Positions 815-38,183 of a DNA stretch of 64,000 bases are shown piece by piece. Each line of letters starts with the position of its first letter. The first letter of the stretch is position 1. Source of the DNA: Perna viridis. Its lineage: Eukaryota. The stretch spans positions 38,219,586-38,283,585 of the forward strand of contig CM074518.1 in assembly GCA_037379345.1 (NCBI GenBank), read 5' to 3'. The notes below the pieces were generated by a model. It had not been told where the DNA came from. It did not search any database and saw only the letters and a program-made list of their open reading frames with translations. The translations under genes were made by a program, and so were the position numbers.

Positions 815-1137
815 AGGTCTCCGACAATAGAGGTAGTCTATTTTTTACAAACCAACACGTGTTTGTCCGTGACGACACTGGTAGCAACAAGGCCTGTCTG
901 ATGTGTTCAGTTTTTGGCAATAAAACTAAATGTGGAGATGCTAGGAAGACGTATTATAAATGTACAGCTTGTAACGTTTTCTTGTGTAAAGGTGATTCGA
1001 ACTGCTTCAGAAATTTCCATCTTCTGATGGGAGAAACCGCTGTTACGATGCATGGAAGTCGTAGAGAGTTGCGGCAAACATTAGCATCAAAATACAATGA
1101 ATGGTGCAGTAAAACTACTAAAAATCCCACCGAATGA
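815..1137 (+). CDS. Cassette 1: putative alternative terminal exon, piggyBac-type CRD zinc finger
   Basis: Acceptor tttatcctttcAG at 813-814, phase 1. HVFV..CLMC-x18-CTACNVFLCKGDSNCFRNFH plus C-terminal tail. Stop at 1137, AATAAA at 1276. Confidence 0.85.
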
Positions 1138-1972
1138 CAATATAATATCTTTGATGCCTGTCATTGTATTCTCCGTAATTATAAACATAGTAACAGTATG
1201 ATAGATAAGACCTGTACATTCTGATTTACTTTCTCATTGGACGCGTATTGAACGCATATTTAAAGTATATAGTTGAATAAAATTACTATAACTACTAGCA
1301 CTTTGAACATTTGATGCCTTGGTATAAACACTTAAATTTTGTTGTCGTTGGAATCTTCGTGTGATCAGATCTTCTCCAGTACACTTAGTCCAAAATTTAA
1401 TGAGAACATTGTCAGTGTAGATCTAAATGATACTCCTGCATTCGAAATTTAGGATAAATCGCTCTCTGGACTCGATGCATAGAGTTTGATGTTTTAAAAC
1501 AAATATTGTCGCTGTGTTACTTCGTCAATCTGATTTATATATTCCCACTCGACTATCAGATAGTAGATTGGAATCACCCCGTCAACCTGTTCGAATTCCA
1601 TCTTCATTATCATTGCTTGAGTTTCATCTCAATTATCTTTGCTTCCACTGATTGATCCACTTCAAATTTGTTTTGTGGCTTTATTTAGGTGGAACTGAGT
1701 TTGCTTGTTGTTCGATATCGACAGCCTGTTTTGTGGTACTTTCCTATTTTACTGTATGGAACGAGATTGGGGTATATATTAGAAACATCATGGTCATGTT
1801 GAATTTGCCCCTTTAGATACGTATGTTTGTTGTGCTTCTTTCTGGTATCGGTATATCATGGTGCTAGCATTGTATCAACTAAATACTTGCATTATTTTTT
1901 TTTCTGGAATCGATGGAGTATTTCGTTGTTATTCAGGAATAATTTGTTTACCGAATTCGTTTTTACTTTCAG

Positions 1973-2268
1973 TTGACCCAACCAACCTGTCGGTTTCAAT
2001 GCAACATTTATGTACTCGTGACGTCGTCAACAGATACTGTATAATGTGCTCTGTTGTTGGCAATAAAACCACCAAAAGTAAGGAGGTCAAAAAGTCGTAT
2101 TACAAATGCCAGATGTGTAACGTGTACTTGTGCAGGGGTGAATCTAACTGTTTTGCCTTGTTCCATGAGCTTCTTGGTAGCGAAGTAATGACTTTTGTAC
2201 ACGACAGGTCGACGACCAAACAGATATTGAAGGCGAAGTATCAGCGCTTGTTCCGAGAACACAATTGA
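1973..2268 (+). CDS. Cassette 2: CRD terminal exon
   Basis: Acceptor ttttactttcAG at 1971-1972, phase 1. CIMC-x19-CQMCNVYLCRGESNCFALFH. Confidence 0.85.
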
Positions 2269-2527
2269 GGTGTTAGGTAACTGCCACGTGACTTGATTTC
2301 ATGGTGTAGGGAACTCATTCTAACTGATCGACTGCATTTGTTTTGAACTACTGTGTTGTCCTATCTATATGAAAGAAAGTTGTATAGCTAGACATGGCTA
2401 GTATTCAGTTAAAAGTACGGAACTATTTCTTCAGATACTAGTGTTAGCTACTTTGCTGTCTTGTATGTGCAATGAATGATATTTTTTAAAGTTGCGCAGA
2501 TATGAGAAAAGTGCTTCTTTCTTTCAG

Positions 2528-2925
2528 ACGTTTCCAGGAATAAAAGAACTGACGAAAATCCTCAAGCACAGCACAGACTTGTGTATACTGAAGAAAAACG
2601 ATTAAGAAAATGCGTTTATTGCTATCATAAAAATGTGAAGACTTACAGCGGACATGCTGTGACGTCATATTTCCAATGTCAGGCTTGTGGAGTTGCTTTG
2701 TGCAAGACCATGCGAACTTGCTTTGTTGATTTTCATAAGTACATCGAGGAATCTGGTAACCCGATACAAATCGTTGATGGACGAAGGAATCGGTCTATCA
2801 AGTCTGAAGCATGCACCATTCCTTCGTTTAGGTCGGATGGTCGATCATCTGTTGATACTTGTACCCAAGATCCTGCACAAGAATATACTTATTGCATCAC
2901 CCTATCCTCTCCTGAATCTCAGTGA
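2528..2925 (+). CDS. Cassette 3: CRD terminal exon
   Basis: Acceptor cttctttctttcAG at 2526-2527, phase 1. HRLVYTEEKRLRKCVYC-x18-CQACGVALCKTMRTCFVDFH with a long tail. Confidence 0.85.
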
Positions 2926-3341
2926 TGTGGTCCCTGTTATTGGGTGCTCAATGAAAAAGGTTGAGGTTACATCATATTAACTTGAGTTGGCATATAAACT
3001 GTATCATAGACTTGTAAAAAGATGAAGGCAAAATGATTGTCTATATGTTGAATGAATAATGGTCAAATAGCAAGGAGTTGACATATAAAGGCGGGACTGA
3101 AATGGCGGGAAAGGGTTTTATTTTTACTTAAGTCGTGAAGACCCGATTGTACCTTCGTAGAAAATAACTGCTATACATGGAAGTTTGTCATTGACATGCA
3201 ATTATTATATATAATAGCTAGTGTAGAAACCTATACGTGTAAGAAACTCGTTAAAATAACATTAAACACATCTTGCAAGTTTTATGATTAAGCTGAGTTA
3301 GTTTGTAAAATGTTGACATTGGATCTGTTTTCCATTTTCAG

Positions 3342-3640
3342 ATCCACGAACTATAGAGACTGCAAAATCTAGCGATTTTTTCACATTCAAAGGAAACAAA
3401 CCAATATCCCTCCAGCAGTTACAATCAGTTGGTCATTTCATTGTTCCCACGTTTGAGAGAAAACTAAGACCTTGTATTCTTTGCTCTATGTGTAAAGTAA
3501 AAACGAAGTCTGGATGGCGTGTGTATACACGATATAAATGTGCTGGTTGTGACGTTCCATTGTGTACCAAACACCGAGACTGTTTCTTGATCTATCATAC
3601 CACTCTTCTTCAACACGCAGAGTCTTCAAACTTGTCTTGA
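3342..3640 (+). CDS. Cassette 4: CRD terminal exon (absent from the ORF track)
   Basis: Acceptor ttttccattttcAG at 3340-3341, phase 1. Manual translation: (D)PRTIETAKSSDFFTFKGNKPISLQQLQSVGHFIVPTFERKLRPCILCSMCKVKTKSGWRVYTRYKCAGCDVPLCTKHRDCFLIYHTTLLQHAESSNLS*. Confidence 0.85.
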
Positions 3641-3814
3641 GAAAAGGAACTTTTTGCTAATAAAAAAGCATATTGAAAAAAAAAGTATATGATAGTTTTT
3701 TGAAGATTTTTTCTGACATTTGACAGTTCTTACCGTCGTTTATGATTGTATAAATAGTGTTGGTTAGTTAATAATAAAAGCATTATTCAGTTTAACTATC
3801 GTTTTCCCTTTCAG

Positions 3815-4110
3815 AATATGCCGACAAACGATGCCATAGCCATAGAGATTTATTAGTTTGTTCATCCGTTTCTACTCTTGGAGCAATGGGTCACGTGTTA
3901 GTGAATAACCCGGATGGAAAGGCTAAGGCTTGTGTTTATTGTCTGAAAAATAATATCAAATCTAAAGCCGGATGGAAAGTTTATACTCGGAACAGGTGTT
4001 TGCTATGTGATGTTGCCTTGTGCACAAAAAACAGGCCATGTTTTTACCTACATCACAAGCCTTTATTAGACAACATAAATACATTTGGAACTGATTTACA
4101 GAAAGATTAA
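3815..4110 (+). CDS. Cassette 5: CRD terminal exon
   Basis: Acceptor ttttccctttcAG at 3813-3814, phase 1. GHVLV..CVYC-x18-CLLCDVALCTKNRPCFYLHH. Confidence 0.85.
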
Positions 4111-5503: not shown

Positions 5504-5802
5504 ACCAATCTGGCCAAAGTATGGGGACTCTGCCATTTTATCCATATACGGGACAACGAATCGATAGTGCATCATGGGAAAAACTGAAATCTTTAGGCCA
5601 TTGTATCACACCGACAGAGGGTCGGAAAGTTACTCCTTGTGTTTATTGCTCTATAAATTCTGTCCGTTCTAAGACAGGGCGTAAAACCTACACAAGAAAT
5701 AAATGTGGGCTTTGTGATATACCGCTTTGTACAAAAAATAGAGACTGCTTTAATCTTTTCCATTGGTCGGTATTGGAGAAAATATTTGAGGGTTCAGGAT
5801 AG
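5504..5802 (+). CDS. Cassette 6: CRD terminal exon
   Basis: Acceptor ttttctttgtttcAG at 5502-5503, phase 1. GHCIT..CVYC-x18-CGLCDIPLCTKNRDCFNLFH. AATAAA at 5910. Confidence 0.85.
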
Positions 5803-6849
5803 ACATAACGAATGGTATTACTGCTTTTGAACAGTCATTTGAAAAAAAAAAAATGAAATGTATATGTATAAATGTCTGTACAATTTGTATTGGGGATATA
5901 TCGGTTATAAATAAAATTAGTTTGTTTTTTTTTTCTCTTGATATGATTATTTAACCAGATATTATAGGTTTATTGTTAACGTCATTTACCAAGCCACGTG
6001 TTGATTTCTTGGGTTTGAGCCGGGAGGAGGATTGTTAGGATTTTTCCAACTGTCCTATGGGTCTTGTCAAATGATCAATGATGGAAAATTGCATCGATTA
6101 ACCTGTCCGATTCATAATCTTATGAAGCCATACCTCTAGATGCAAAAATAATTTAATAATCCATAAGATACCATGAAAACTTCCCCATTCATAAGGAGAT
6201 AACAACAGAAACATTTCCATACCCATAATGCATCAAGTAGTTTTACCCCACTCATTAGATTCGGACATATATTGCTATAGCCTAATCCGTTCATCTTTTT
6301 GTTTCACTTTTCTGTAACAGATTTATCAGCTTCTACTGGAGGGAATTCTTAGATATAAGGTATATTGCTTTTGCATGATGACTTTTTTTACTTTGCGTCG
6401 CCTTTACAGATCATTGCTTATCTACTTCCTGTCTGTCCTATGACTTAATTTGACAGAATTTGGTTACAAGGGGCTATCTTAGCACGATGTTACGTTTAAC
6501 TTCTTGTTGAAATTCAGTGTAAATGTTGCTCTACAGTCTTGTCAAAGTGTGTAGGTATCAGGCGTGCGAAGATTTATATGGCTTTGCCGAAAGGCAAGCA
6601 TGTATTGCATGGTAGTAGGTGTTTCAAGGACGCGAAGGATCTAACAAGGTCAGCTTTCTTTTGAGTAATGGCTATTTGCAAACATTTGACATGTGCTGAT
6701 AGTACGACTATATTTTCCTAGATATCTTTTTAGACTTTGTCGATTATCTTGGAATACTTCGCCCAATTTAGAATACTTCAGTTCAAAATATGTAACTTGA
6801 TTTTAGACGTTTTCTTGGTAATTTGAAGTTGGTACGTTTTACCTTTCAG

Positions 6850-7133
6850 GGATGATTGCTGTCCCATCAGATATAGATAACAGGCTTGCTAATATACAAT
6901 TTTGGAGGAGTCTTGGACACAATGGCGGCGACACCGAGGGAAGGAAAGTTCGTCCCTGTAAACTCTGTAGCATGCAAAATATTCGATCAAGTTCTGGACA
7001 GAAGGTCAAAGTTCGCCATCGTTGTCTGGCTTGTGACGTACCTCTCTGTATGGGACAGAGAGATTGTTTTTACCATTATCACCAATTGCTGTTTAGCACA
7101 AAAAGTGCTGAACCGTCAGTTGACATGAAGTAA
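6850..7133 (+). CDS. Cassette 7: CRD terminal exon
   Basis: Acceptor ttttacctttcAG at 6848-6849, phase 1. CKLC-x18-CLACDVPLCMGQRDCFYHYH. Confidence 0.85.
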
Positions 7134-7305
7134 TTTAAGTGAGTCCATTTAGGTTACGGTCGACTGGCGAACATTTCGGACCGAAAACCATATGAACGTT
7201 TTTAACTGTATGAATGGATGATCATGTGTATTTTGTTGTCATGTTGATGAAAATGGTCGTCTGTTTAAATCAAATGTTTACGATCCTCTCAATTTTTCCT
7301 TTCAG

Positions 7306-7568
7306 ACACGGATGGATTTTCCCCAGATTACAAAGAAAGATTGGAAAATTTACAATCTTGGCAAAATCGTGGACATATTGTTGTCGATACTGATGACAAA
7401 AAAGTTCGAATATGCAAACTTTGTAACATGAACAATATCCGTTCTTTGTCAGGGCAGAAAATCAGAGTTCGTCATCGTTGTCTTGGGTGCAATATTCCAT
7501 TATGTGTTCGTCAAAGAGACTGTTTCTATAAGTATCACTTAGCGATTTTTAATCAGTCAATAAGTTGA
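7306..7568 (+). CDS. Cassette 8: CRD terminal exon
   Basis: Acceptor tttttcctttcAG at 7304-7305, phase 1. CKLC-x18-CLGCNIPLCVRQRDCFYKYH. Confidence 0.85.
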
Positions 7569-7758
7569 GGTTTTGGTTATTTTTGGACAAGATGTCCTCG
7601 TCTGAATGTCAAAGAACAGTCTTACTACCAGTTGCGCATGTTGCAAACGTTATATAGACTTTTGAGAAAGATTATTGTATTATTTCATCATTCTTTGTTG
7701 TCAAGACGTTTGATTAAGTCATCAAAACTTGTCATGGATCCGTTTTTATTTTTTCCAG

Positions 7759-8045
7759 ATTTGGTACCCAAAATCTACATCAACCCACGTTTAATGACAA
7801 CAAAGGATGATGCTTTGAGAATTTTATCTATTCAGGGTCATACGATAATTGATACAGAAGAAAAACGGCTAAAACCCTGTGTTGTGTGTGCCGAGCGTAA
7901 CGTTCGATCGCATCGGGGCCATTGTATACGAATTCGCCATCAGTGTTCTAAATGCCGAGTAGCTTTGTGTATTGGATATAGAGATTGTTTCACCGCTCAC
8001 CATCAGTCCTTATTAGATCCAGATTGCAAATCAGATATCATTTGA
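7759..8045 (+). CDS. Cassette 9: CRD terminal exon
   Basis: Acceptor tttttattttttccAG at 7757-7758, phase 1. CVVC-x18-CSKCRVALCIGYRDCFTAHH. Confidence 0.85.
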
Positions 8046-8175
8046 AACGTTGAAGTAGTCATTAATACGAAACAAATTGAGTATTTGGATTCATCTTTTT
8101 TTTTTATTTGGGCAGTTACGTATTTTAGTTTTTTCTTCACAAGGATTGAAATGTTCCTTTTGTCTATATTTTCAG

Positions 8176-8438
8176 ACATGCAATATCTCGGGGAGAGTAC
8201 TCGTTGTTCCAAGGATAATCGAGCTTACTGTCTCCAAGCTCTTTCCTTATATGGTCACAGAATTGTCGACACTCAAGGGCAAAGACTTCGAGCGTGTGTT
8301 GTGTGTGCTAGTCGCAATACTCGATCTAGATTTGGACTTAAAGTTAGAATAAGGCACCAATGCTCGAAATGCGGAGTTGCATTATGTGTTGGGAAACGTA
8401 ATTGTTTCTCAATCTACCACGATTCTCTTTTACAATAG
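8176..8438 (+). CDS. Cassette 10: CRD terminal exon
   Basis: Acceptor tctatattttcAG at 8174-8175, phase 1. CVVC-x18-CSKCGVALCVGKRNCFSIYH. AATAAA at 8504 and 8517. Confidence 0.85.
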
Positions 8439-9781
8439 AATGAAGACCGATAAATAATGTGTCAAAAATTTTTGTACAGTGTGTATATGTTATCATAATC
8501 TCCAATAAATATTGTTAATAAAAACTGTGTTTTTATTAAAACAAGTGTGGATTCTGAAAGATTAAGGAATTCATTTTCTTGACTTTTCTATACGTTCAAT
8601 ATTGAAATACATAGATTGCTATCTTCTTTACTTGTATTTATATTTATTTGTTTACTTTATTTATGTTTGTAAGTATTGGGTTCTCTCGGTGGTCTATAAA
8701 TCCGGTTCAGTGTGTTGGACTTGTATAAAGCAGGATCTGTTTAATTTTCCAATCGTTGTCGTCACATCTGCTATTAGGATATCCAGTAAATTTCAAGTTA
8801 GATCTAGTTTTAATTATATGATCAGTGGTCACAAGAATCACCTAAGAGTCATGCTGGAAGTGATTTTTAAATATTTTGCTAAGAATTATTGAAACTCAGC
8901 AATGGTTCCATGTAATCTTTCTTCCAGTGGCATTCATTTTAGAATGATATCGACATCACTTGAACCTCAAATATCTTACAAGGGGTAGTTTACGCAAGAA
9001 AAAAATAATTCTGTACCTAAAGCATGAATACTATGTCATTTATTCTATTGAAATACTTCTAGTACCTAATTATAATTTTGCTTAACCTCTATTTAATGAT
9101 ACAAAAGGTAACGATGATAGTTTAATCTCGTACGTAGATAGGAGACGCGAAAACTTCAAACATTCTCAGCTTTGAAAAAATGTGAACGGAGGCTTACATT
9201 ATGAAGGGCTATTGCAACTTTTTACCACAATTTTGTTTCGAAACTTGAACCACTGCTTAGTGTTCTAATTCACAAATTACAAATTGTGATGCTTTGAAAC
9301 TACCGGACTTCAACAAGTAAAAAATCTTTTAAAGTCCCCAAAACACTGAGGCTTCTTTTGTATTGTACATGGTAGAACGATTTCGTAATGGATGTGACTT
9401 CCTATTTCGATAGTTTGGGTTTTCGTGTTCTTGTATACTATTACTTTTGGATTTAGATCTTCCTGTGATTTTAATTCAAATGTTGCGGATGAAAGGTCAC
9501 TCCATAAAACAGCAAAACAAAATATGCAATATTGATATGATGGATAGTTTTGTATTAATGAAACAATTTGAAAGATTATGGAGTTATGAAAATTTGCTAT
9601 TTAAGCGTTGTCTTGAAATACCGAGACCAAGAAACGTAATAACTAATGGCTCGAGGGAAACCATTACATATATACCAGTGCACTTTTCATATATCTTATA
9701 TGTTTATTGAATCAACCGATGTATTATTGACTCTTCAACAGTCGTGAACAAGGATTGACGCCACATTATTTTATCTTTCAG

Positions 9782-10065
9782 GGTTTGATCCATTTGTATT
9801 ATCTTGCTATGCGACTGATGTGCAACAGAGAGCTAAGAAAAGAGAACAAACACAACAGCTTGCCAATCTCGGGCATGCTGTAGTTGATACGTTCAGTAAA
9901 AGGAAGAAAATATGTGTACAGTGCCTTAAAAACAATGTCCGTGCACCGTCAGGAGAAAGAGTTCGGGTGCGACAGCAGTGTGGGACATGTAACGTTCCGC
10001 TTTGTGTTGGATTCCGAACCTGTTTTGTCGATTTTCATAAAGCCCTTCTGGACAAACATTCTTAA
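9782..10065 (+). CDS. Cassette 11: CRD terminal exon
   Basis: Acceptor ttattttatctttcAG at 9780-9781, phase 1. CVQC-x18-CGTCNVPLCVGFRTCFVDFH. AATAAA at 10404. Confidence 0.85.
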
Positions 10066-11043
10066 CAATTTCGAGGTTTTAGAGTCATTTCTGTTGTCGA
10101 TATGTTAAAAGAACGTTTGTAATGGATCTGATGTACTAAATACTAGGAATATGTGATTTACACGTAGTTCTTCTAGACAATCATAAACCTGGAGAGTTTT
10201 GAAAAAAAATATGTATATTCCATCATGTTTCTTTTTTTATCTGAGTATTGGATTGGTTATTTTATATAGTTTTAATGAACCTGGCCAATTTGTAATAATT
10301 TGATTTTAACTTGCTTTGGCCGAATTATTGGAATTTGCATTGAATTACGTATTCATAAAGGCTTGCATGTTGTAACTCATTGCTTCTTTTTATATTCGAA
10401 TGGAATAAAAACTCATGAGCATGATGACATTGAAGTTTTTTTTCATGTCAAAGAGTTTCAGTAGATTGTTAGTGTTTAACCTAGGAAGTCCTTGGGTGAA
10501 GGATCTTAAACATAGACACAACAATTGTTGGCATTCTTCATGTTAAGGGCCGAATTTTTCAGAAATTTTTCTCATTGTGGATTATATTTTTAGGACTGGA
10601 TTATTCTTCATTTGATTTTGTTCTGAACCGAAATCATGGGGAAAAAATGAAATAGAATATTCCCGCCTATATGTCGTAATCTCCCTCAAGCTGGATGTTT
10701 TCATAGTGTTCTTTTTTCCGGTTGTTTTTTCTTCTTGTGCGTCAGTTGAACGCGTATTTTTGATGTCCGTTCCTTTTCACACAATCTCTATATTATAGTT
10801 TATTGTGTCGTTGATTACTGATTTTTCTGGTCCTATGTCTGTTAACTGCTGTCATCTTAACATTTAAGATGTATTGGATTTTGGCTTTGAATAAATCCGA
10901 TTTCGTTAGTTCTCGTAACCATAGCTACCCTTGTCAATTGCTGGTTGTGAATAAAACTGTATACAATTATTTCTCCGATTCTAACAGCAAACTTCAACGA
11001 TTATGAGTCGCTTAACGGAATAAATGTTTCTTTCTCCTTTCAG

Positions 11044-11345
11044 ATTTACCAGCCCTTCAACAAATGGCATCAAAAACCGATGGGTTACCGATTGATCTTG
11101 AACAAAGGAAATACTTTGAGCTTGATCATAGACATTTTATGACATTTTTAGAAACCAAGGGCCATATTATCGTAAATACCATTGACTGTAAATTAAAACC
11201 GTGTAAATACTGTTCTAAGTACAAAATAAAAACGAAATCCGGATATCTAGCAAGGACCAGAAACAAATGTTATCTATGTGATGTTCCTTTGTGCACGAAA
11301 AATCGTGATTGTTTTTACCAGTACCACAAATCATTTATTCAATGA
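11044..11345 (+). CDS. Cassette 12: CRD terminal exon
   Basis: Acceptor tttctttctcctttcAG at 11042-11043, phase 1. CKYC-x18-CYLCDVPLCTKNRDCFYQYH. AATAAA at 11390. Confidence 0.85.
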
Positions 11346-11419
11346 TGTAAGATGGATGGAAGTACGGTGTTATAACTTATTTTCTCATTAATAAACACTC
11401 ATCCATTGTTTCCTTGCAG

Positions 11420-11697
11420 GCTTGCACGATATTCCTTTCCTATCGTCTGCTATGGTGGAAATGAACCAGATATCCCATGATTCCATGCGCGAACATAAGC
11501 TTGTTCCGCTGGAACACAATCGTAGGAAGAGATGTAAATATTGCCAAATACGGCGGGTGAGAACAGCTGCGGGTGGGACATCTGAAACTGCCTACCATTG
11601 TCTGGCTTGCCAAATACCTTTGTGCCCCGGAATTAGATCAGGAAGGGATTGTTTTATCAAATATCACAAGGAATATATATTTCCCAGTCAAACTTAG
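11420..11697 (+). CDS. Cassette 13: CRD terminal exon
   Basis: Acceptor ttgtttccttgcAG at 11418-11419, phase 1. CKYC-x18-CLACQIPLCPGIRSGRDCFIKYH. AATAAA at 11979. Confidence 0.85.
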
Positions 11698-12725
11698 CTC
11701 TGATTCAAGCATACATTCTGTTCTCTTAGATTGGACTTGAATTGTTTGTCAAACATATACAGAATCATTATGTAGTTGTTTTCCAGAAACATAAAAAAAC
11801 TAAACCTGAGCAGAGGCAATGATAACACACCGTTTGTTTAGGAATTAGACTGCATCGTTTATCCATTCGCTTATTGTTGTTTTCGTAAAATAGATGGTAG
11901 AACTTGACTTTGTTGTTGTTGATTTATTTACAGTTGTTACGTACTTTTTGTTAAAATGTGTATCCAGATTTTGTAGTAAATAAATAATCTATTCAAATTG
12001 TACGAGTTGTCTCTGAACTTATACATTTTTTCTTTTGTGTATTCTGGAATGGGTTTGAAATGACCCTTAAGAAATATTTCCATAAATCTCTCCGTTTTTT
12101 CATCACTGTATTTTCCGCGTTATAACTTACATGTGCAACGTTGTGAGTGGAGAATTCAATGCCACTGTATGCGGATATGTATTAAAATCGATTATCTCCA
12201 TATGTTTTTTGTAACAACTGAACCGTCATTTTTGACCCTTCGGAAGATGTACCTTGGACATTAATTCAAGTTTTGAATCTGTCAGGATATATGTTTACAG
12301 TATTTGTACTATGCAATGCATATCTGACATTTTCCCGATGCAATCCGTATAGTTTTGCTTTTTTTACCCTTTGACCTTAAAGACGCCATTCCATGGAAAT
12401 GAAAGTCACTTAATCGAAGTTCTGTTTCGGAAATTGAAATTGTGTGCTATATGTTATTTCCTGAATGAAATGAAGAAAATTTTAAGGAAAAAGAACAAAT
12501 TTTACTGCGTCGGTTGTCCTTTTTTAGATAGTACCTGTTTTCCAATACTATACGTCTTAACAAAAAGTGCCTCACTAGAGTAGTGTCGCGTTTTTCGTTC
12601 TATTAGTACACAGGGTTAGATAAGGTCTTTGTTTTTCTCTTGTTCCTGGTTTAATTTAAGGATACATTGTTCGATTAGAATGTTTGGGTTCTCTGAAGAT
12701 TGATTGAAGCTATTTCTTCTTGCAG

Positions 12726-13009
12726 GTAACATGGATGGAAAGCCGTCACAACTACATCAATTAACTTACAGTTCAGCCAAAACTGGTATACCGGGTCATA
12801 ACGTTGTACCGACTGATGGACGGAAACAAAAACTATGTAGATATTGTCGCGCTTATGAGAAAAAGTCACCTTCCGGTTGGAAAATCTTGACGCGCTCTAA
12901 ATGTGAAACTTGTAATGTTCCGTTGTGTCAGGATGTTCGAACTGAGAGAAATTGCTTTAGATTGTTTCATGAGGAATATGTGTTTGGAAAACAATTCAAG
13001 TTTATGTAG
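12726..13009 (+). CDS. Cassette 14: CRD terminal exon
   Basis: Acceptor tatttcttcttgcAG at 12724-12725, phase 1. CRYC-x18-CETCNVPLCQDVRTERNCFRLFH. Confidence 0.85.
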
Positions 13010-14144: not shown

Positions 14145-14431
14145 GTAGTGGTACCAGTTCAAATGTACAGGTCATTCCTCAGAAAAATCCTCCTCCGTTG
14201 TTACGAGTAACATCTAGTCTTGAAGGTCATGAGTTAGTCCCGAATGATGGTTTCAAACAAAAAATATGTCACTTTTGTAGGATGACTGGACAGAAAACTG
14301 TTTCTGGCTGGACAGTTTTGACTGGAACTAAGTGTTCATTGTGTAATGTTCCACTTTGTAGGGGTACAACCCGGCCTCACAGAGAGTGCTTCAGATTATT
14401 TCATGAAAGGCTTCTATCCCAGAATCAGTGA
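14145..14431 (+). CDS. Cassette 15: CRD terminal exon
   Basis: Acceptor ttcttttattttcAG at 14143-14144, phase 1. CHFC-x18-CSLCNVPLCRGTTRPHRECFRLFH. Confidence 0.85.
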
Positions 14432-14745: not shown

Positions 14746-15032
14746 TTGAATATTTGTTGACAGAAAAGAAAGCGAGTTATCCTCTTCCGGGTCAAAGGTT
14801 ACAGTCGCTATTAGAACTAACTCCGAAGGGACACCATTTGGTTACTACGGAAGGGTATAAACAAAAGGCATGTCGGTACTGTTCTTTAATAGGAAGGAAA
14901 ACCTCTACAGGGAACACTATTTGGACTCGTGTCAAATGTTCCGTCTGTGATGTACCGTTATGCCAGGAGACAACTAGAACACAAAGACAATGTTTCAAGT
15001 TGTATCACGAAAAAATTAGTTACTCGGATTAG
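14746..15032 (+). CDS. Cassette 16: CRD terminal exon
   Basis: Acceptor ttgttctcctttcAG at 14744-14745, phase 1. CRYC-x18-CSVCDVPLCQETTRTQRQCFKLYH. Confidence 0.85.
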
Positions 15033-16212: not shown

Positions 16213-16412
16213 AAGCGGATGTTTTAATGCATAGGTTGGTGCCGAATGAGGGACACAAGCAACGGAAATGTAAACAATGTAAAAGAAATCGGGTCCGGAC
16301 CAAAAAAGGATGCCGTGTTAATACAAGATTCCACTGTGACTTGTGTAACGTGCCACTATGTCGGGAGCGTAACTGTTTCCAGCAATTTCATCAACAATAT
16401 CACTTTCAGTGA
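16213..16412 (+). CDS. Cassette 17: CRD terminal exon (shortest)
   Basis: Acceptor tttatactttgcAG at 16211-16212, phase 1. HRLVPNEGHKQRKCKQC-x18-CDLCNVPLCRERNCFQQFH. Confidence 0.85.
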
Positions 16413-16777: not shown

Positions 16778-17037
16778 GCTACACAGTGTCAGAGACTTCA
16801 TTTTGGTACTCTTTTGACTCCATGAATTCTGGTATTCCTGGACATAAAATTATTCCAAACGAGGGTCATAAACAAAAGAAGTGTAAACAATGTCAGAGAA
16901 GTAAGAGGAAAACTAAATCTGGTTGGCAAGTAGCGTCAAGGTTCCGTTGTGAGAGTTGTAATGTTTCTTTGTGCCGTGATAATTCTTCTAAGAGGGGCTG
17001 TTTTAGACAATATCATGAGGAACTTGGCTTGATATGA
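16778..17037 (+). CDS. Cassette 18: CRD terminal exon
   Basis: Acceptor ttgacgttttgtAG at 16776-16777, phase 1 (a second in-phase cAG lies at 16785-16786). CKQC-x18-CESCNVSLCRDNSSKRGCFRQYH. Confidence 0.8.
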
Positions 17038-20705: not shown

Positions 20706-20944
20706 AAGAAAAAAATGGAATGAGTTGCATGGTTAGCGGAAATGACGAGAAACATCATCATAGACTGGTTCCATTAGGGTTTGGAAAGCAGAGAACCTGC
20801 AAACAGTGTAGGATTTTAAAATCTAGAACCCGAACCGGACTCCGGATATTTACCAGATACAAATGTGAAGCATGTGATGTGGCTTTGTGCAATCCCTTTT
20901 CCTCTGACCGGAATTGTTTTTTCGCATACCATCAGCATTCGTAA
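20706..20944 (+). CDS. Cassette 19: CRD terminal exon
   Basis: Acceptor cctgtttctttgtAG at 20704-20705, phase 1 (TAGAAG tandem acceptor). CKQC-x18-CEACDVALCNPFSSDRNCFFAYH. AATAAA at 20943, 21240 and 21379. Confidence 0.85.
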
Positions 20945-22738: not shown

Positions 22739-23274
22739 GTGCTCGTCTTCCAGCGAGAGGTGCCAGATTGTCTAGACAAAGGTACCCGCCTAGAGATAAC
22801 CGTTTCTACTCCCACGCGCTCCAAGAACAGACAAGCCAAATAGGGCAGTATGGGCAAGGTTGTATGGAGGATAGTCGATGGATTAATAGAAAGCCTTCTG
22901 GTGTAGGTGGTACTCAAACATCTTACGACTCGAGTCGTTTGCAAGTTTACCAAAATAGCCAAAAGGTCGATGGTGGTATCTCCAGACCTTCCGAAAATAA
23001 ATCTTACATACATCCAGTCCAGTTGCAGGGTCTAGATAATTTGCCTGGTCATAAAATTGTCCCGGTGGAAAAGAAGACTGGGATGCGGTGCCTTTATTGT
23101 CAGATCCACAAAATAAAAACTCCTTCCGGTTGGAGGGTCAAAACCAACTATAAATGCGAAACGTGTGGTGTACCCCTCTGTTCCAAAGAAGTAACTGAAC
23201 GGAATTGCTTTAGATTACACCACATAGAGATGTTTGGCGATACCATTCTTGAATCAGAGGAAAATCCGTTTTAG
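22739..23274 (+). CDS. Cassette 20: CRD terminal exon with long N-terminal linker
   Basis: Acceptor ccttcctcattgtAG at 22737-22738, phase 1. About 100-aa Q/S/G-rich linker, then CLYC-x18-CETCGVPLCSKEVTERNCFRLHH. Confidence 0.8.
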
Positions 23275-24121: not shown

Positions 24122-24507
24122 ATAGCAGCATTTCTAAGGAACCTTCACCGTTCTTGTTTGGAGACACAGACAAAAGGGAAGACGTCATACGAAATTTGCA
24201 CCGGAACGAAATCCCAGAAGACACTATTCACGGCGAGCAATCTCAACGAAAATCGTTACAAAATTTACCATTTTCCAATATGCCCGAGGGTCATTCCCTT
24301 GTTTTGGTAGGGATCAGTGAGAAAACTGGGTGTGTGAAACAAAAAGACTGTCGCTACTGTTCGAAGTACAGTGTAAAAACTAAAAGTGGATACACTGTCC
24401 GTACACAATATAAATGTTCCGGATGTGATGTTGCACTTTGTTCTGGTGAACTTACCGGTAGGAACTGTTTCGTTCTGTTTCATAACGAACTTTTCCTTGG
24501 CGTGTAG
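24122..24507 (+). CDS. Cassette 21: CRD terminal exon
   Basis: Acceptor ttttgacctttcAG at 24120-24121, phase 1. CRYC-x18-CSGCDVALCSGELTGRNCFVLFH. Confidence 0.85.
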
Positions 24508-24978: not shown

Positions 24979-25331
24979 GACAATTGTACTACCCAACAGG
25001 AAATAGACCAAGATTCGTACAGAAGAAACACTTGCCATCAGATGATATTCTCGGACAAAGCTCGCTTCATTATTCGTACCCATTTACCAAGGAAAATCTG
25101 CCAGAGGGACACAATCTTGTCCCTATTCCAGACAACAGGAAGAAAGACTGCAAATTCTGTCGTCGTCATAATATTAAAACAAGGAGAGGATATTCCGTAC
25201 AAACTCAATACAAATGTGCTGTCTGTGATGTGGCGTTATGTTCAGGGGTGTACAATAATAGGAACTGTTTTGTAGACTTTCATAACGAAACCTACATGAT
25301 CCAAAGAAACATTTCACAAACAGACATGTGA
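24979..25331 (+). CDS. Cassette 22: CRD terminal exon
   Basis: Acceptor tatttgacgttacAG at 24977-24978, phase 1. CKFC-x18-CAVCDVALCSGVYNNRNCFVDFH. Confidence 0.85.
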
Positions 25332-27016: not shown

Positions 27017-27393
27017 ATGGCAGTAACGCTGTTTATGGAGCTCATGATTTTGGAGTAGGTGGGGATGGCTTACCTGGCCAAATACACAATGCACATCTGT
27101 TGTCTCTATCTGAAATTCAGAGAGATCTTCCGATAACTTTTTCCAATTTCCCGGGAACAAATCCGATGCCTTTACCGGAATTTTCAGGGGGCCATCGGCT
27201 TGTATTGACGGATGGAAGGAAATTACGGAATTGTCATTACTGCGAACAGCATTGTGTCAAGACTAAAAGTGGATATACCACACGGACTAGATATTATTGT
27301 CAAAAGTGTAACGTGCCATTGTGTGTTGGTCGATACAGGAACAGAAATTGTTTCGTTGATTATCACAATACGATGAACCAAATAAATGATTAA
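27017..27393 (+). CDS. Cassette 23: CRD terminal exon
   Basis: Acceptor tttgactattacAG at 27015-27016, phase 1. CHYC-x18-CQKCNVPLCVGRYRNRNCFVDYH. AATAAA at 27445. Confidence 0.85.
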
Positions 27394-28721: not shown

Positions 28722-28996
28722 AGTATATACAGAGATTGTTTGACCAGCCTAATTTAGGTCCCATTCCTATTGGAGATATGTCTGACCACCCATTGGTCCA
28801 TATCAACGAGAAGCGCACGCAAAGGGACTGTAAATACTGCCAGATCCATAAGATAAAGTCAAAGTCAGGGTTGCGTCTAAAGACTTTGTTTAAATGTGCA
28901 AAATGTAACGTGCCCCTATGTGCCGCACAAAATACGGACCGACACTGTTACGTTTTGTTCCACAATGAGTTTATATTCGGATATTCTCATATGTAA
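28722..28996 (+). CDS. Cassette 24: CRD terminal exon
   Basis: Acceptor ctttgtttctttcAG at 28720-28721, phase 1. CKYC-x18-CAKCNVPLCAAQNTDRHCYVLFH. AATAAA at 29083. Confidence 0.85.
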
Positions 28997-32662: not shown

Positions 32663-32988
32663 AATTAACCACTCTACAGATGATAAACATGGATGATATA
32701 ACAGTATTACCTTTATCCGACTCCAGAACTCGATGGAATATGAATAGAAAATTTCACATACCCGGGCACCAAGTGGTACCCATTGGAATGGCAAATGAAC
32801 AGAGGGACTGCAAGTACTGTCAAAAGAAAAAGATTAAAACGAAACGTGGATGGAATGTGAAAACTAAATTTAAATGTGATAGGTGTAACGTAAATCTGTG
32901 TTCCGGTGACATGACGTCACGAAATTGTTTCGTTTTGTTTCACGAAGAGTTTGTATTTGCTGGTAATCAGAATCCTTATACCACATAG
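32663..32988 (+). CDS. Cassette 25: CRD terminal exon
   Basis: Acceptor ttctactttttcAG at 32661-32662, phase 1. CKYC-x18-CDRCNVNLCSGDMTSRNCFVLFH. Confidence 0.85.
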
Positions 32989-34699: not shown

Positions 34700-35880
34700 T
34701 GCAATACTTGACATCTATTTTCGACGACCACTTTCAACCTTATAGCTAAAGTACAACATATTCATTTTCCTGTTGTAGCACAATGCCTCAGGAAACCATA
34801 GTCCATCATTAGCAGTTAGAAACGTCTTGAACTGTTGACTAAATCGCGGTAACAATGTCAAATGGTTCGATGAATATCCAACGACATAAAGGATTTCGTG
34901 ACTATCAACGCATATGCCGTGTGGCCATCGAATTTAGGAATTTACAATATTTTCCCCCTGTTGTGGAGCAACATGTGATTTTGTCATTTTTCCAATCGGT
35001 GTAATATATCCTGTCTTTGAATGTAGTTATGTAATTAACATGATCAACATCCACACTCAGAGTGTTCTAAACAATACCCGATTCATCGATCATCGCAACA
35101 CCCTTTCCTTTTACTATTACATTAAGTCACCCGCTTTGGTAGGATACTCCATAGCATTCTCCGCCAGGTCGGACTTTCTTTTTGATCTTCTTCTTTGGTG
35201 CTGACTAAGATTATTAGAACTTTATCTTTATATGTAACAGCAATACGGTCCACATCAATTACAGCTACATTGCAAACGGAAGGCTTAGCAGGACCGAAAA
35301 TGTCACACACATGGTGGTCATCTTCGGTGTACTTTGTTAGCTTGCCGTTGTACTCAGTGATGAACAATCTACCATCTCCTGACAAAGCGCACCCGATGAT
35401 AGCCTTGTTGCTAGTACCTATTTGTATATCAATGACTTGTTTTGAGCTTAGCTCGATTTCTAGACTAGATATATCAATTTGAGCTTGATTTAAGTCAGCG
35501 TGTCTGTACACTATACTAGGTGTCGTATCCATCACCTGGATATCACCAAAAACTTTGGATATCTTTGATTATAGATGAAATAGATGAAATAAATTTTCAC
35601 CTGAAACATGAATAACTTTGATACGTTTAGTGTATTTTTGAGACAGTCGATATTTCTTGTAAAAGTATTTCTCATTTGTCGAACAGCTTAAAATAATACG
35701 ACTTTGGATGCCGATTCTTGAATATGAATGAGAGAGATTTTAATTTGTGTGAATTCTTCATTAAAGGACCTCAAACTGTCTAGTATTGAGGGGCACTGTG
35801 CTCGTCAGTCTTTGTATTTTTCTTCAATATCCTCTAAAAGTTGTTTTTCTAGTCGGTCTAGATGTTTATCTAATTGTTCG
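34700..35880 (-). pseudogene. TRIM-like / NHL beta-propeller pseudogene, antisense within the array
   Basis: ORF 35122-35535 (IIGCALSGDGRLFITEY..VAVIDVDRIAVTY) continues after frameshifts as ECYGVSYQSG*LNV..IDESGIV*NTL..DRIYYTDWKNDKITCC and WPHGICVDSHEILYVVGYSSN..DGLWFPEALCYN. These are NHL-like repeats with in-frame stops. The 5' limit is approximate. Confidence 0.75.
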
Positions 35881-36033
35881 AGGACATTGCAAACTTATTT
35901 TTAAAATCCTGGCCGTTTTGGCCCTAGGAACATTTTCGATAATACCATTACCATGGTTTTCTGGACGGTCTCTTAGATGTTTGGTAGGATGAGGATCGAT
36001 TTGTACCACTAGCAAAGTTTCGTAATAGGAATG

Positions 36034-36207
36034 AAGTTTGGGTAGAAGTTGATAACAAGAGAGACAAAGTGTAAAACATGGTCAGATTAACAAGTTTGGG
36101 TAGAAGTTGATAACAAGAGAGACACAGTGTAAAACATGGTCAGATTAACAAGTTTGGGTAGAAGTGGATAACAAGAGAGACACAATGTAAAACATGGTCA
36201 GATTAAC
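36034..36207 (+). repeat. 58-bp tandem repeat, 3 copies
   Basis: aagtttgggtagaagttgataacaagagagacaaagtgtaaaacatggtcagattaac. Confidence 0.95.
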
Positions 36208-36897
36208 TCTGTCTAGTACAATACAATTTTATATCCTTCATTTTGTTTATGTTTGTCTGGTGTTATTTCATTATTCTACTTTTACTTGCGCAAACGGCCA
36301 AGGCATGTTATAAATCTTTCCCTATAATTTCAATTTTGGATCAGTCGATTTTAAGCCTAAATAGCGATTATTTGGGTGTCAATTTAGCGTTCATATACTT
36401 TTAGTTATTCTATCACTTTTGTCAAATGAAATATGCGAGATTTTTTTAACTTGTTACATAGATAAGGGTCGTGGATGTCGCGTGATGTCAGCGATATTTC
36501 AATATCGACCCCCCTCCTCCCCCCCCCCGAAAAAAAATGGATTGCAATCAATTATTTTCTCAGTTTTGCACAAAGAGTAGTGGTCCTACACCGGACTCTC
36601 CTGCGAACAGTGTTGTGTTAAACTTTACCCCATGCCAATTTCTCTCGCTTATGTAGTTCCAAGGCTCATTTTCCTGTACGATGGTTTTAATGTTCTATGT
36701 TCATGCTACGGTAAAATTTTTGGTCACTACTCATGCATTACCTATAACATATCATCATTCAATTGTTTTTCACTGACCTGAATTTTTCCCTAAGACAATG
36801 ATGCATCGAGACTGTTGCAACTAAATATGTAAACAAAAACAAAACTAAACAAAATGTATACTGTCGTAATGTGATATCGCCTATGATTTCAATACCT

Positions 36898-37069
36898 GCA
36901 GGGCCGGATCCAGATACTTTGAAATGGAGGGGTACCAGCCGAGTTCCTCAGAAAAAACGGGTGTTAGGACATTATTTGCCACTTTTTTTTAAAATTTTAT
37001 ACGAGAAAGGACAAATTTTCCCATTAAAGGGGTTCTAACCCCATGCACCCCCCTATGGATGCGCCGCTG
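36898..37069. mobile_element. Short MITE, ggcggatcc-type TIR family
   Basis: caggggccggatcca ... tggatgcgccgctg. Internal ccagccgagttcctcagaaaaaa is shared with 23628-23655. Confidence 0.6.
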
Positions 37070-37636
37070 ACCTCAGCATTCAAGATGTCATTGATAATAA
37101 GTTTGAATCCCCCATTTTCTGTTCAAATAATTATTTCTTTTGTTTTGTCCTTAATTGAAAGATTGTAGTACCGTTAAAATAACGACAATGTAGCCTGTTT
37201 TAACCGAACCATGAATAAACCGAAACCTAAACAAGACACTTTTGGTATTCCCTTTATTTAAGAATTGGCAATAATAAAAATTTTGTCTATTGAAAAATAA
37301 CAAAAATTATCCATGTGCATATTGTTTATTGCGCGAAAGTCAAAAATATTTTGTACATGTACCTATTAGGAGTCCAAGGTCAGGTCCAGAGGTTTTGAAA
37401 AGGGGGTTAATTGAGGAGGTCTCAGCAAAAATGAGGCTTCGGACTATTATTTGCCCAATTTTGCGTAAATGTTGCACGAAATTAAGAATGTTTTCGAATA
37501 AAAGGGGGTCCAATCCCCTGCATTCTTTACTAGAGTCCGTAGAATATAACAAATGTTATGCAGGGTCTGCTTGTTTGGTCTTGAAAATGATCTCGCCCTG
37601 AAATTTATGAAATATCTGTCATGGGACGTTAAACTA

Positions 37637-37664
37637 CAATCAATCAATCAATCAATCAATCAAT
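37637..37664 (+). repeat. (CAAT)n microsatellite
   Basis: About 7 units. Confidence 0.9.
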
Positions 37665-37842
37665 GAGTTGTATACTGGTATTTGAAAACCAGGCATCTGA
37701 GCGTCTTTGGTAATCGGAGCTACTTGTTTCCGGTATAAGTAGTAAAATGGTATACCCGTTTTGTGTTGCTATGCATGCGCATTAAGCGGTGACATTTGAT
37801 GATAATGTTATATGATTAATATTTACAACTTGTTTGTTGCAG

Positions 37843-38183
37843 ATCAAAATGAAATGATTACACCACAATTATTTCCTGATGATATGGCTTTCCTCTCTAC
37901 ACAACAGGAGCTGCTGGTTGGAGATACAATGTCAAAACAGGTACCAGACAGGACGAAAAAAGGCTTTCAAATATATGGACACAAACTGGTACCCACGGAC
38001 GACAGAAAACAGAAGTTGTGTAGATATTGTCGGGCAACGTGTCAAAAGTCTCCGTCAGGACGTAGAATTCTGACAAGATCGAAATGTGATACATGTAATA
38101 TACCATTATGTATGGACGGAACAACGGAAAGAAACTGTTTCCGATTATACCATCAATTTCTTTTTAAACATACATCTACCTGA
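37843..38183 (+). CDS. Cassette 26: last CRD terminal exon of the array
   Basis: Acceptor cttgtttgttgcAG at 37841-37842, phase 1. CRYC-x18-CDTCNIPLCMDGTTERNCFRLYH. Confidence 0.85.

What the first reader, a model, noticed from the sequence alone, without database searches (positions are those of the whole stretch)
893..38150. Fixed 18-residue basic segment with variable sequence: a possible specificity repertoire
The C2-C3 spacer is exactly 18 aa in 25 of 26 cassettes (19 in cassette 2), with Gly at position 10 in all 25 and a (K/R)(T/S)xxG core in most. Flanking residues vary widely (KTKSGWRVYTRYK, RSSSGQKVKVRHR, RTAAGGTSETAYH, KSPSGWKILTRSK). All eight putative Zn ligands are kept while linkers are unalignable, implying purifying selection on the fold. 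Inference: a beta-hairpin whose variation changes nucleic-acid target preference.
Basis: partly seen in the sequence, partly recalled or inferred. Interest (0 to 1): 0.75.

Follow-up and report, generated by a model that had tools for sequence, protein, structure and literature searches.

The report
Alternative piggyBac zinc-finger exons, BTB gene
The 26 "cassettes" are alternative last exons of one mussel-like BTB transcription-factor gene, each adding a different zinc finger borrowed from a piggyBac transposon, and the fixed 18-residue segment is the loop that in the solved relative reads DNA bases.

Summary
Observation confirmed: 26 cassettes, all on the + strand. The C2-C3 spacer is 18 aa in 25/26 and 19 aa in cassette 2. 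Gly10 is present in 25/25 and [KR][TS]xxG in 24/25. All 25 loops differ; 100 shuffles gave 0 matches.

Each cassette is a piggyBac-transposase C-terminal zinc finger (Pfam PF13842, 27/29) of the piggyBat type. The AF2 model matches PDB 9c0f at Z 6.7, with the next hit at 3.1 among 48,161 chains.

The cassettes are not a multi-finger protein. They are alternative terminal exons of a bivalve BTB/POZ gene whose common exons end 12.3 kb upstream. In cDNA-like contigs from four studies, the last common exon is spliced directly onto cassettes 7, 9, 11, 12, 13 and 14, and no cassette-to-cassette joints were seen.

Mytilus californianus has 1:1 orthologous isoforms. Loop identity is 0.84 between orthologues and 0.27 between paralogues.

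By alignment, the loop corresponds to the piggyBat loop that reads bases in the major groove (PMC11707139).

This is a lola/mod(mdg4)-like architecture with a new DNA-binding module. I found no paper describing it. DNA binding itself is untested, and the related PiggyMac finger does not bind DNA.

The parts
205..416 (+). Decayed copy of cassette 2 (dead cassette) left by a tandem block duplication
   Evidence: window 218-328 is 80% identical over 124 nt to window 2002-2124. The translation (ORF 46-408) has lost ligand cysteines.
815..1137 (+). Cassette 1, alternative terminal exon (C1 at 895; loop 907-960)
   Evidence: PF13842, 29.1 bits; phase-1 acceptor tttcag|AG. Near-duplicate of the cassette at L001:9365.
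1973..2268 (+). Cassette 2 (C1 at 2038). The only one with a 19-aa spacer and no Gly10
2528..2925 (+). Cassette 3 (C1 at 2611)
   Evidence: (24.3 bits)
3342..3640 (+). Cassette 4 (C1 at 3473)
   Evidence: It has no start codon, so it is missing from the ORF list.
3815..4110 (+). Cassette 5 (C1 at 3931)
   Evidence: Orthologue is M. californianus isoform P0127 (support 100/99).
5504..5802 (+). Cassette 6 (C1 at 5638)
6850..7133 (+). Cassette 7 (C1 at 6957). Junction to the common exon seen in RNA-like contigs
   Evidence: loose end at 6848 reads the last 26 nt of the common exon. predicts the same acceptor.
7306..7568 (+). Cassette 8 (C1 at 7413). Its own junction is not listed
   Evidence: covered only by contigs that run on from cassette 7.
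7759..8045 (+). Cassette 9 (C1 at 7878). Junction seen
   Evidence: loose end at 7757 in X1, X2 and X4
8176..8438 (+). Cassette 10 (C1 at 8295). Its own junction is not listed
   Evidence: Best match of Mytilus isoform P0123. In the tree P0123 is sister to cassettes 9+10 together (98/93).
9782..10065 (+). Cassette 11 (C1 at 9913). Junction seen
   Evidence: loose end at 9780 in all 4 runs
11044..11345 (+). Cassette 12 (C1 at 11202). Junction seen
   Evidence: loose end at 11042 in X1, X2 and X4
11420..11697 (+). Cassette 13 (C1 at 11533). Junction seen
   Evidence: loose end at 11418 in X7
12726..13009 (+). Cassette 14 (C1 at 12836). Junction seen
   Evidence: loose end at 12724 in X2, X4 and X7. 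Mytilus counterpart is P0128.
14145..14431 (+). Cassette 15 (C1 at 14267)
   Evidence: Orthologue P0122 (99/90).
14746..15032 (+). Cassette 16 (C1 at 14871)
   Evidence: Orthologue P0134 (100/96).
16213..16412 (+). Cassette 17 (C1 at 16269)
16778..17037 (+). Cassette 18 (C1 at 16882). This is the cassette modelled by AF2
   Evidence: (36.9 bits). Orthologue P0126 (98/93).
20706..20944 (+). Cassette 19 (C1 at 20798)
   Evidence: Orthologue P0130 (100/97).
22754..23274 (+). Cassette 20 (C1 at 23089). Long linker; acceptor position uncertain
24122..24507 (+). Cassette 21 (C1 at 24349)
24979..25331 (+). Cassette 22 (C1 at 25149)
27188..27393 (+). Cassette 23 (C1 at 27232). Acceptor uncertain and may lie further upstream
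28722..28996 (+). Cassette 24 (C1 at 28829)
   Evidence: tblastn with Mytilus isoform P0001 gives 69% identity. Tree support 97/95.
32663..32988 (+). Cassette 25 (C1 at 32809)
37843..38183 (+). Cassette 26 (C1 at 38019), the last of the array
   Evidence: No further CRD motif beyond 38183 in any frame.

Best explanation
The window holds most of the variable region of one bivalve gene.

Shown:
- The gene's common 5' exons lie upstream of the window. They are a start exon, a 1.2-kb BTB/POZ exon and an acidic exon. The acidic exon ends 12,261 nt before the window in a phase-1 donor.
- The pre-mRNA is spliced from that single donor to one of at least 29 alternative terminal exons: 3 just upstream of the window and 26 inside it.
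- Each terminal exon carries a phase-1 acceptor, a poorly conserved linker, one piggyBat-type piggyBac zinc finger (two zinc sites: His + 6 Cys + His) and its own stop codon.
- Each mRNA therefore encodes BTB + linker + one finger.

Inferred:
- The BTB domain, which most resembles the ZBTB-type BTBs of MIZ1, BCL6 and BACH1, dimerises and recruits partners.
- The finger binds DNA.
- The 18-residue C2-C3 segment is an extended hairpin loop that enters the major groove.
- K/R6, T/S7, G10, V/I13, T15 and R16 form a constant scaffold with backbone contacts.
- Positions 11, 12, 14 and 17, and probably 1-5 and 8, set each isoform's target.
- Choice of terminal exon thus yields a repertoire of about 29 DNA-binding specificities from one gene, and more if isoforms heterodimerise through BTB.

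The array grew by local tandem duplication and is old: single cassettes have 1:1 orthologues in Mytilus.
For: Architecture:
- One search finds the BTB-like ORF and the acidic ORF upstream. One search confirms Pfam BTB (E 1.8e-10).
- tblastn with the Mytilus orthologue P0001 maps residues 1-43, 39-479 and 480-610 to three upstream exons. Its tail maps best to cassette 24.
- the last common exon ends ...GGCTTTAGAG|gtaggc, phase 1.
- 26/26 cassettes have a YAG acceptor in the matching phase.
- in contigs of 4 runs from 4 studies, the last 24-27 nt of the common exon are joined to 6 of the 8 acceptors inside the 6-kb stretch laid. All 6 are the top predictions. No cassette-to-cassette joint appears.
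- 15/15 M. californianus isoforms diverge right after the homologous ...GGFR.

Domain identity:
- PF13842 in 27/29 cassettes.
- The profile hits piggyBat transposase 9c0f at E 8e-4.
- AF2 pLDDT 86.7.
- VIA Z 6.7, rmsd 1.6 A over 53 residues. It is the only Z>=5 among 48,161 chains.

Loop as reading element:
- PMC11707139 (passages read): the piggyBat loop after beta1 lies in the major groove, and R543/E545 contact bases.
- By these map to loop positions 6 and 14.

Selection:
- Orthologue loop identity is 0.84 against 0.27 for paralogues. Positions 11, 12, 14 and 17 are 0.9-1.0 against 0.07-0.27.
- 7 one-to-one cassette/isoform pairs meet both support thresholds of the tree. An eighth pair, u2/P0121 (99/68), misses one.
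- dN/dS is 0.17 for the recent duplicate pair (7 synonymous and 5 non-synonymous changes).
- The 18-aa spacer occurs in 61/67 bivalve BTB-CRD proteins, with Gly10 in 60/61.

BTB type: best PDB matches are MIZ1/BCL6, NAC1 and BACH1.
Against: - No binding data exist for any cassette.
- PiggyMac's CRD has the same His/Cys pattern. It did not bind DNA in vitro and bound histone H3 weakly (PMC8086355, abstract).
- The runs are only guessed to be RNA. They are contigs, so they give no expression level, no transcript ends and no strand.
- Direct junctions were seen for 6 of 26 cassettes. Cassettes 8 and 10 lay in the stretch but had no junction listed (2 loose ends were not shown).
- Whether splicing is in cis or in trans cannot be told.
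- The mapping of R543/E545 rests on a weak alignment (E 8e-4) with a 6-residue gap whose exact place is uncertain.
- Only 10 of the 15 sampled Mytilus isoforms have a clear counterpart here.
- Some database proteins carry 2-3 such fingers (P0157-P0160).
Confidence: 0.7

Rival explanations
1. Same gene architecture, but the fingers do not read DNA sequence. Instead they bind histone tails, RNA or partner proteins, as FLYWCH domains of some mod(mdg4) isoforms bind partner proteins. The loop would then vary to match those ligands.
For: PiggyMac CRD, which has the same ligand pattern, does not bind DNA and binds the H3 tail weakly (PMC8086355, abstract). It is rank 2 in Foldseek. The remaining structural neighbours (C1, MYND, zf-HIT) are not DNA binders.
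Against: The model is far closer to the DNA-bound piggyBat CRD (Z 6.7) than to PiggyMac (Z 2.1). The loop is strongly basic, at mean +5.2. K/R at the position aligned to the base-contacting R543 is kept in 25/25. Sister terminal exons of the same two genes encode C2H2 and BEN domains, both DNA binders.
Confidence: 0.17
2. The isoforms do bind DNA, but their targets are transposon ends. On this view the array is a KRAB-ZFP-like defence repertoire that tethers a BTB repressor to piggyBac-like elements and turns over in an arms race.
For: The finger derives from a transposase domain whose native job is to bind transposon ends (PMC11707139, PMC5861402). There is birth and death in the array: a recent duplication and one dead cassette. 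5 of 15 Mytilus isoforms have no clear counterpart here.
Against: 10/15 isoforms have 1:1 counterparts with conserved loops across genera whose common exons are only 68% identical. That is stability, not an arms race. The genome search lists only two PF13842 matches outside this cluster (a lower bound). None of the 10 longest or multi-hit relatives carries a transposase core.
Confidence: 0.1
3. The cassettes are internal exons chained into one protein with many fingers.
For: All cassettes share one strand. Unnamed database proteins have 2-3 fingers (P0157-P0160).
Against: Every cassette frame ends in a stop 2-62 codons after the last His. No cassette-to-cassette joints appear in 4 runs. The common exon joins each cassette directly. 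15/15 Mytilus RefSeq isoforms carry one finger. P0157 is an ORF read through two adjacent cassettes, since it still contains the acceptor-derived 'CFLAG'.
Confidence: 0.02
4. The cassettes are dead remnants of piggyBac 3' ends with no function.
For: One copy is visibly decayed (window about 205-416).
Against: 26/26 have intact ligands and open frames. There is no transposase core. They are spliced to BTB exons. They have conserved orthologues. 0 matches in 100 shuffles.
Confidence: 0.01

Closest known systems
Drosophila lola (and fru/ttk-like BTB-ZF genes)
   Same: Common 5' exons encode a BTB domain. Many alternative 3' terminal exons each encode a different DNA-binding zinc finger: 17 of 20 lola isoforms have distinct C2H2 fingers (PMC11426971, passage read). 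The result is one gene with a repertoire of specificities.
   Different: The finger here is a piggyBat-type piggyBac CRD, not C2H2. The BTB resembles vertebrate ZBTB types. PMC11426971 reports finding no TTK-type motif in Mollusca. The locus is in bivalves, so this is convergence, not orthology. Trans-splicing is known for lola and unknown here.
Drosophila mod(mdg4)
   Same: BTB common exons plus at least 30 alternative terminal exons, most encoding a FLYWCH zinc finger, a domain also linked to transposases (recalled). Comparable number of variable exons.
   Different: Different finger fold. mod(mdg4) has variable exons on both strands and is made by trans-splicing (PMC13490949, abstract only). 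Here all 29 lie downstream on the same strand, and the minus-strand cassettes belong to a separate mirror-image paralogue with its own BTB exons.
piggyBat transposase C-terminal CRD (PDB 9c0f); PGBD2-4 predicted alike
   Same: Same Pfam family, same order of zinc ligands and same fold (Z 6.7, rmsd 1.6 A over 53 residues). The C2-C3 loop is the major-groove reading loop in piggyBat.
   Different: The piggyBat loop is 12 aa, against 18 aa here (a 6-residue insertion with an invariant Gly). piggyBat uses Cys3His + Cys2His2, whereas the cassettes have Cys at the fifth position (Cys3His twice). piggyBat's CRD is attached to a DDE transposase core, and here it is attached to BTB.
Host-transposase fusion genes such as CSB-PGBD3
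   Same: A host gene splices to a transposon-derived exon, giving a protein with a host N-terminus and a piggyBac-derived C-terminus (cited in PMC12062965, passage read).
   Different: Those fusions capture a whole transposase once. Here only the 60-residue finger was kept and then amplified to dozens of alternative exons.
PiggyMac CRD (PDB 6zop)
   Same: Same His-CxxC-CxxC-C-C-His arrangement with an upstream His ligand (PMC8086355).
   Different: Weak structural match (Z 2.1). PiggyMac's CRD does not bind DNA.

Membership tests
Pfam PF13842 zf-Tnp_2 (piggyBac transposase C-terminal CRD) | Match to the family HMM | tested here: met
   27 of 29 cassettes match at E<=0.01. 8 of 9 tested as whole ORFs are over the 24-bit cut-off, and the ninth scores 21.7 bits.
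piggyBat/PiggyMac-type CRD subtype | Ligand order His-x(n)-CxxC-x(n)-CxxC-x4-C/H-x(n)-C-x(2-4)-H | tested here: met
   The six Cys and the last His are invariant in 29/29. The upstream His is present in 28/29 of the trimmed alignment, and in the 29th it lies further upstream.
piggyBat/PiggyMac-type CRD subtype | Fold of the piggyBat CRD | tested here: met
   AF2 pLDDT 86.7. 9c0f_D at Z 6.7, rmsd 1.6 A, 53 of 64 residues. Next best Z is 3.1 among 48,161 chains.
piggyBac-like transposase | DDE_Tnp_1_7 catalytic core N-terminal to the CRD | tested here: not met
   The exons spliced upstream encode BTB, not a transposase core. None of 10 related long proteins has the core.
piggyBat-type CRD as a DNA-binding domain | Sequence-specific DNA binding through the C2-C3 loop | not testable with these tools
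   Inferred only from alignment to 9c0f and PMC11707139.
lola / mod(mdg4)-type locus | Common BTB exons joined to one of many alternative terminal exons, each with its own binding domain and stop | tested here: met
   6 junctions were seen directly.
lola / mod(mdg4)-type locus | TTK-type (arthropod) BTB domain | tested here: inconclusive
   Best PDB matches are ZBTB-type BTBs. PMC11426971 reports no TTK motif in Mollusca. I did not run a TTK-specific profile.
lola / mod(mdg4)-type locus | Trans-splicing of common and variable exons | not testable with these tools
   Contigs cannot separate cis from trans. All + strand cassettes lie downstream of the donor, so cis splicing is sufficient.

The most novel reading that the evidence does not exclude
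Pteriomorph bivalves have built a family of transcription-factor loci on a domesticated piggyBat-type finger. Each locus offers tens of alternative terminal exons. In every finger a constant 18-residue hairpin scaffold (K/R6, T/S7, G10, T15, R16) presents a few variable residues (11, 12, 14, 17) to the major groove. That would amount to a compact recognition code, evolved independently of C2H2 fingers and convergent with insect lola/mod(mdg4).
Probability: 0.4. Interest if true: 0.8.

Novelty: new variant of a known kind. Interest (0 to 1): 0.65.

Why it matters
This would be a second, independent invention of the lola/mod(mdg4) strategy: one BTB scaffold with many interchangeable binding modules chosen by terminal-exon use. 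It occurs outside arthropods and uses a module taken from a transposase.

The system offers a natural series of about 29 related fingers in one gene, and many more across bivalves. All share a fixed loop length and have conserved orthologues. Such a series is close to ideal for working out how the piggyBat-type finger reads DNA, which also bears on human PGBD2-4.

It also matters for annotation. Start-codon ORF callers miss these exons or fuse neighbouring ones. In addition, clustering at 90% identity hides the isoforms' C-termini: the 28 members of P0001's cluster carry different tails.

Tried and rejected
- A single-sequence search of the PDB with cassette 18 gave only chance hits. The profile of 29 cassettes was needed.
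- Foldseek alone gave E 0.5 for the right fold. VIA-align settled it.
- Searching the C-terminal region of Mytilus isoform P0128 in the 5.8-billion-protein set found nothing.
- The profile search of 1.84 billion representatives returned mostly 70-280-aa fragments without names. It therefore could not give taxonomic breadth or identify a donor transposon. Of the 10 longest or multi-hit rows, 0 had a transposase core. Only the best 150 of 928 hits were listed, so transposases may sit lower in the list.
- Pfam found nothing in the acidic common exon, in two BEN-like minus-strand ORFs, or in window ORFs 35122-35535(-) and 63138-63638(-).
- Poly(A) signals and contig ends are only loosely compatible. 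I draw no 3'-end claim from them.
- Literature: searches found no paper describing BTB genes with piggyBac-CRD terminal exons. PMC12111275 (passages read) states there was no publication on oyster BTB genes. PMC12062965 (passages read) screens TE-host domain co-occurrence and names BTB, but its Table S1, which could list BTB plus the piggyBac finger, is a supplement I could not open. Supplementary Figs 4 and 6 of PMC11707139 (the contact map) were also unseen.
Exons were searched apart and the joined step was left out.

Full report
**Observation.** The window has about 34% G+C and almost no long ORFs, as expected for an animal genome. A six-frame scan for the cysteine pattern finds 26 non-redundant cassettes, all on the + strand, between 895 and 38153. 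The C2-C3 spacer is 18 residues in 25 of 26 and 19 in cassette 2. In the 25 18-mers, Gly10 is present in 25/25, K/R6 in 25/25 and [KR][TS]xxG in 24/25. Mean net charge is +5.2 and all 25 sequences differ. A tightened motif occurs 26 times in the window and never in 100 local shuffles.

[quoted passage not shown] Scanned one by one, 27 of 29 cassettes match.

The alignment of 29 cassettes (A1) has six invariant Cys, an invariant final His, an upstream His (28/29; the 29th has it further upstream), Gly in the loop and Leu before the fifth Cys. This His-CxxC-CxxC-C-C-His order is the variant arrangement described for PiggyMac, piggyBat and PGBD2-4. It is not the CxxC-CxxC-CxxH-CxxC order of T. 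ni piggyBac (PMC8086355, passages read).

A profile of A1 finds piggyBat transposase (9c0f) as the only PDB sequence below E 0.001. An AF2 model of cassette 18 (pLDDT 86.7) superposes on the piggyBat CRD at Z 6.7, rmsd 1.6 A over 53 of 64 residues. This is the only Z>=5 among 48,161 representative chains. Next come a MYND domain (3.1), C1 domains (about 2.5) and PiggyMac (2.1).

**What the cassettes are.** Upstream of every cassette the open frame begins with a polypyrimidine run and CAG. All 26 have such an acceptor in one phase, with the exon starting at the second base of a codon. Every frame stops 2-62 codons after the last His.

The window is G000:C8:38219586-38283585. In the 90 kb upstream the + strand carries:
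- three more cassettes;
- a C2H2 exon with the same acceptor phase;
- an acidic exon;
- a 411-codon ORF with a BTB/POZ domain.

tblastn with the closest named protein, M. californianus LOC127705185 isoform X18, maps residues 1-43, 39-479 and 480-610 onto three upstream exons. Its tail maps best onto cassette 24. The last common exon ends ...GGCTTTAGAG|gtaggc in phase 1, 12,261 nt before the window.

**RNA evidence.** I laid contigs of four runs from four studies on window 6800-12799. The runs' kind is only guessed to be RNA. The stretch holds seven whole cassettes and the start of cassette 14. Loose ends 'before' positions 6848, 7757, 9780, 11042, 11418 and 12724 all read the last 24-27 nt of that common exon. 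These positions equal the acceptors predicted for cassettes 7, 9, 11, 12, 13 and 14, allowing for a 2-nt AG ambiguity. A join across 19-25 kb of genome can only come from spliced RNA, so these contigs are cDNA-derived.

Six of the eight acceptors in the stretch are thus confirmed. Cassettes 8 and 10 had no junction listed (two loose ends were not shown) and are covered by contigs running on from cassettes 7 and 9. No cassette-to-cassette joint was reported.

**Relatives.** The BTB exon finds 175 proteins. The 120 listed are either named as bivalve proteins (Mytilus, Pecten, Argopecten, Mizuhopecten, Magallana/Crassostrea, Ostrea, Saccostrea, Pinctada, Tegillarca) or carry no name. The named ones are mostly 'uncharacterized protein isoform Xn', with BTB plus PF13842, C2H2 or HTH_psq. 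The best hit is 68% identical, so the organism is a pteriomorph bivalve near, but not in, Mytilus.

Fifteen M. californianus isoforms, numbered up to X40, all diverge immediately after ...NDPNNPLGGFR, the homologue of the donor here. Each ends in one finger.

Ten of the 15 have a clear best counterpart among the cassettes here. In a maximum-likelihood tree, seven pairs of one cassette and one Mytilus isoform meet both support thresholds. An eighth pair (99/68) misses one. The species label needs 14 changes for 15 Mytilus rows, so the repertoire predates the split of the two lineages. Neighbouring cassettes tend to group (7+8, 9+10, 14-16), which fits growth by local tandem duplication.

Among 67 bivalve BTB proteins with the motif, 61 have an 18-residue spacer, and 60 of those 61 have Gly10. 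The fixed length is therefore a property of the family, not of this locus alone.

**The 18-residue segment.**
- For ten orthologous pairs, loop identity is 0.84 against 0.27 between paralogues. Linkers are about 0.2 identical even between orthologues.
- Positions 11, 12, 14 and 17 are 0.07-0.27 identical between paralogues but 0.9-1.0 between orthologues.
- Positions 6, 7, 10, 13, 15, 16 and 18 are conserved throughout.
- AF2 shows a bridge between residues 26 and 32 of the model with Gly30 at the turn, which is a short hairpin.
- In the HMMER alignment the piggyBat spacer is 12 residues. The chain index runs 6 ahead of the paper's numbering, which agrees with the chain range. R543 and E545 then fall at cassette loop positions 6 and 14. 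The cassettes carry six extra residues between them.

**Mechanism.** The BTB of the Mytilus orthologue aligns best with MIZ1/BCL6, NAC1 and BACH1 BTB domains (95% and 68% identical to exons 1 and 2 here). These are dimerising transcription-factor BTBs.

The most likely working is a BTB dimer that carries one finger per subunit, chosen by terminal-exon use. piggyBat CRDs bind a palindrome as a pair (PMC11707139), so BTB dimers would suit two half-sites, and mixed dimers would multiply the repertoire. Both points are inference.

A mirror-image paralogue on the minus strand has its own BTB exons, a phase-1 donor, 8 CRD exons, two BEN exons and a DUF3504 ORF.

**Rivals.** Non-DNA ligands remain possible because PiggyMac's finger does not bind DNA (PMC8086355). 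A transposon-targeting role is possible but fits the conservation poorly. Chained fingers and dead remnants are contradicted.

**Novelty.** RefSeq pipelines already model the isoforms, but six literature searches found no description of BTB genes with piggyBac-finger terminal exons. A 2025 oyster paper states that no publication on oyster BTB genes existed (PMC12111275). I rate this a new variant of the lola/mod(mdg4) kind. The scan's first-stage notes on this genome already flag the missing constant exons, the duplication and the dead cassette. I reached and tested these points independently.

Noticed in passing
L001:9184-10000 plus window 1-328, against window 708-2124: Recent tandem duplication of a block of about 1.5 kb holding two cassettes (89%, 85% and 80% identity in three pieces). 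One copy of cassette 2 has decayed (window about 218-328). The intact pair (L001:9365 and cassette 1) has dN/dS 0.17 from 7 synonymous and 5 non-synonymous changes.
   Followed up: yes
G000:C8:38131166-38180865, minus strand (L004-L009): Mirror-image paralogous BTB gene with its own common exons and a phase-1 donor. It is followed by 8 CRD exons (all with an 18-aa spacer), two Pfam BEN exons, two further BEN-like ORFs without a Pfam hit, and DUF3504/QRICH1-like ORFs. The same design uses several kinds of binding module.
   Followed up: partly
L001:3951-4248 (+): An alternative exon encoding two C2H2 fingers, with the same phase-1 acceptor (ctgctttcag|AC). It lies between the common exons and the CRD array.
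   Followed up: partly
window 6850-8504 and 11044-12219: Contigs starting at the cassette 7 or 9 junction run on through cassettes 8-10, and those from cassette 12 run through cassette 13. Groups of cassettes therefore seem to share 3' regions, with downstream cassettes serving as 3' UTR of upstream isoforms. Contigs cannot prove transcript ends.
   Followed up: partly
window 41137-42487: Satellite of about 37 copies of a 36-bp unit (higher-order periods 114, 150 and 186), just beyond the end of the array.
   Followed up: no
window 15809-16206: Ten copies of a 40-bp tandem repeat directly upstream of cassette 17's acceptor.
   Followed up: no
window 18925-19197 (+), 43813-44007 (-), 49193-49414 (-); also C8:38162900 and C8:38185208: A dispersed repeat whose ORF reads ...ESELLIYFCYFVCMILVTLCSLL... 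recurs inside and around the locus. It is probably a mobile element filling the long gaps between cassettes.
   Followed up: no
protein P0126 (M. californianus isoform X34/X35), orthologue of cassette 18: The Mytilus orthologue has Arg in place of the fifth ligand Cys (…VSLRR…). It may be a finger that has lost one zinc site while still being annotated as an isoform.
   Followed up: no
proteins P0157 and P0160 (unnamed library entries): P0157 is an ORF read through two neighbouring cassettes (counterparts of cassettes 12 and 13), an artefact of ORF calling. P0160 is a 1047-aa BTB protein with three 19-aa-spacer fingers, either a mis-joined model or a true multi-finger relative.
   Followed up: partly
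window 35122-35535 (-): 137-codon ORF on the opposite strand between cassettes 25 and 26, with no Pfam match.
   Followed up: partly
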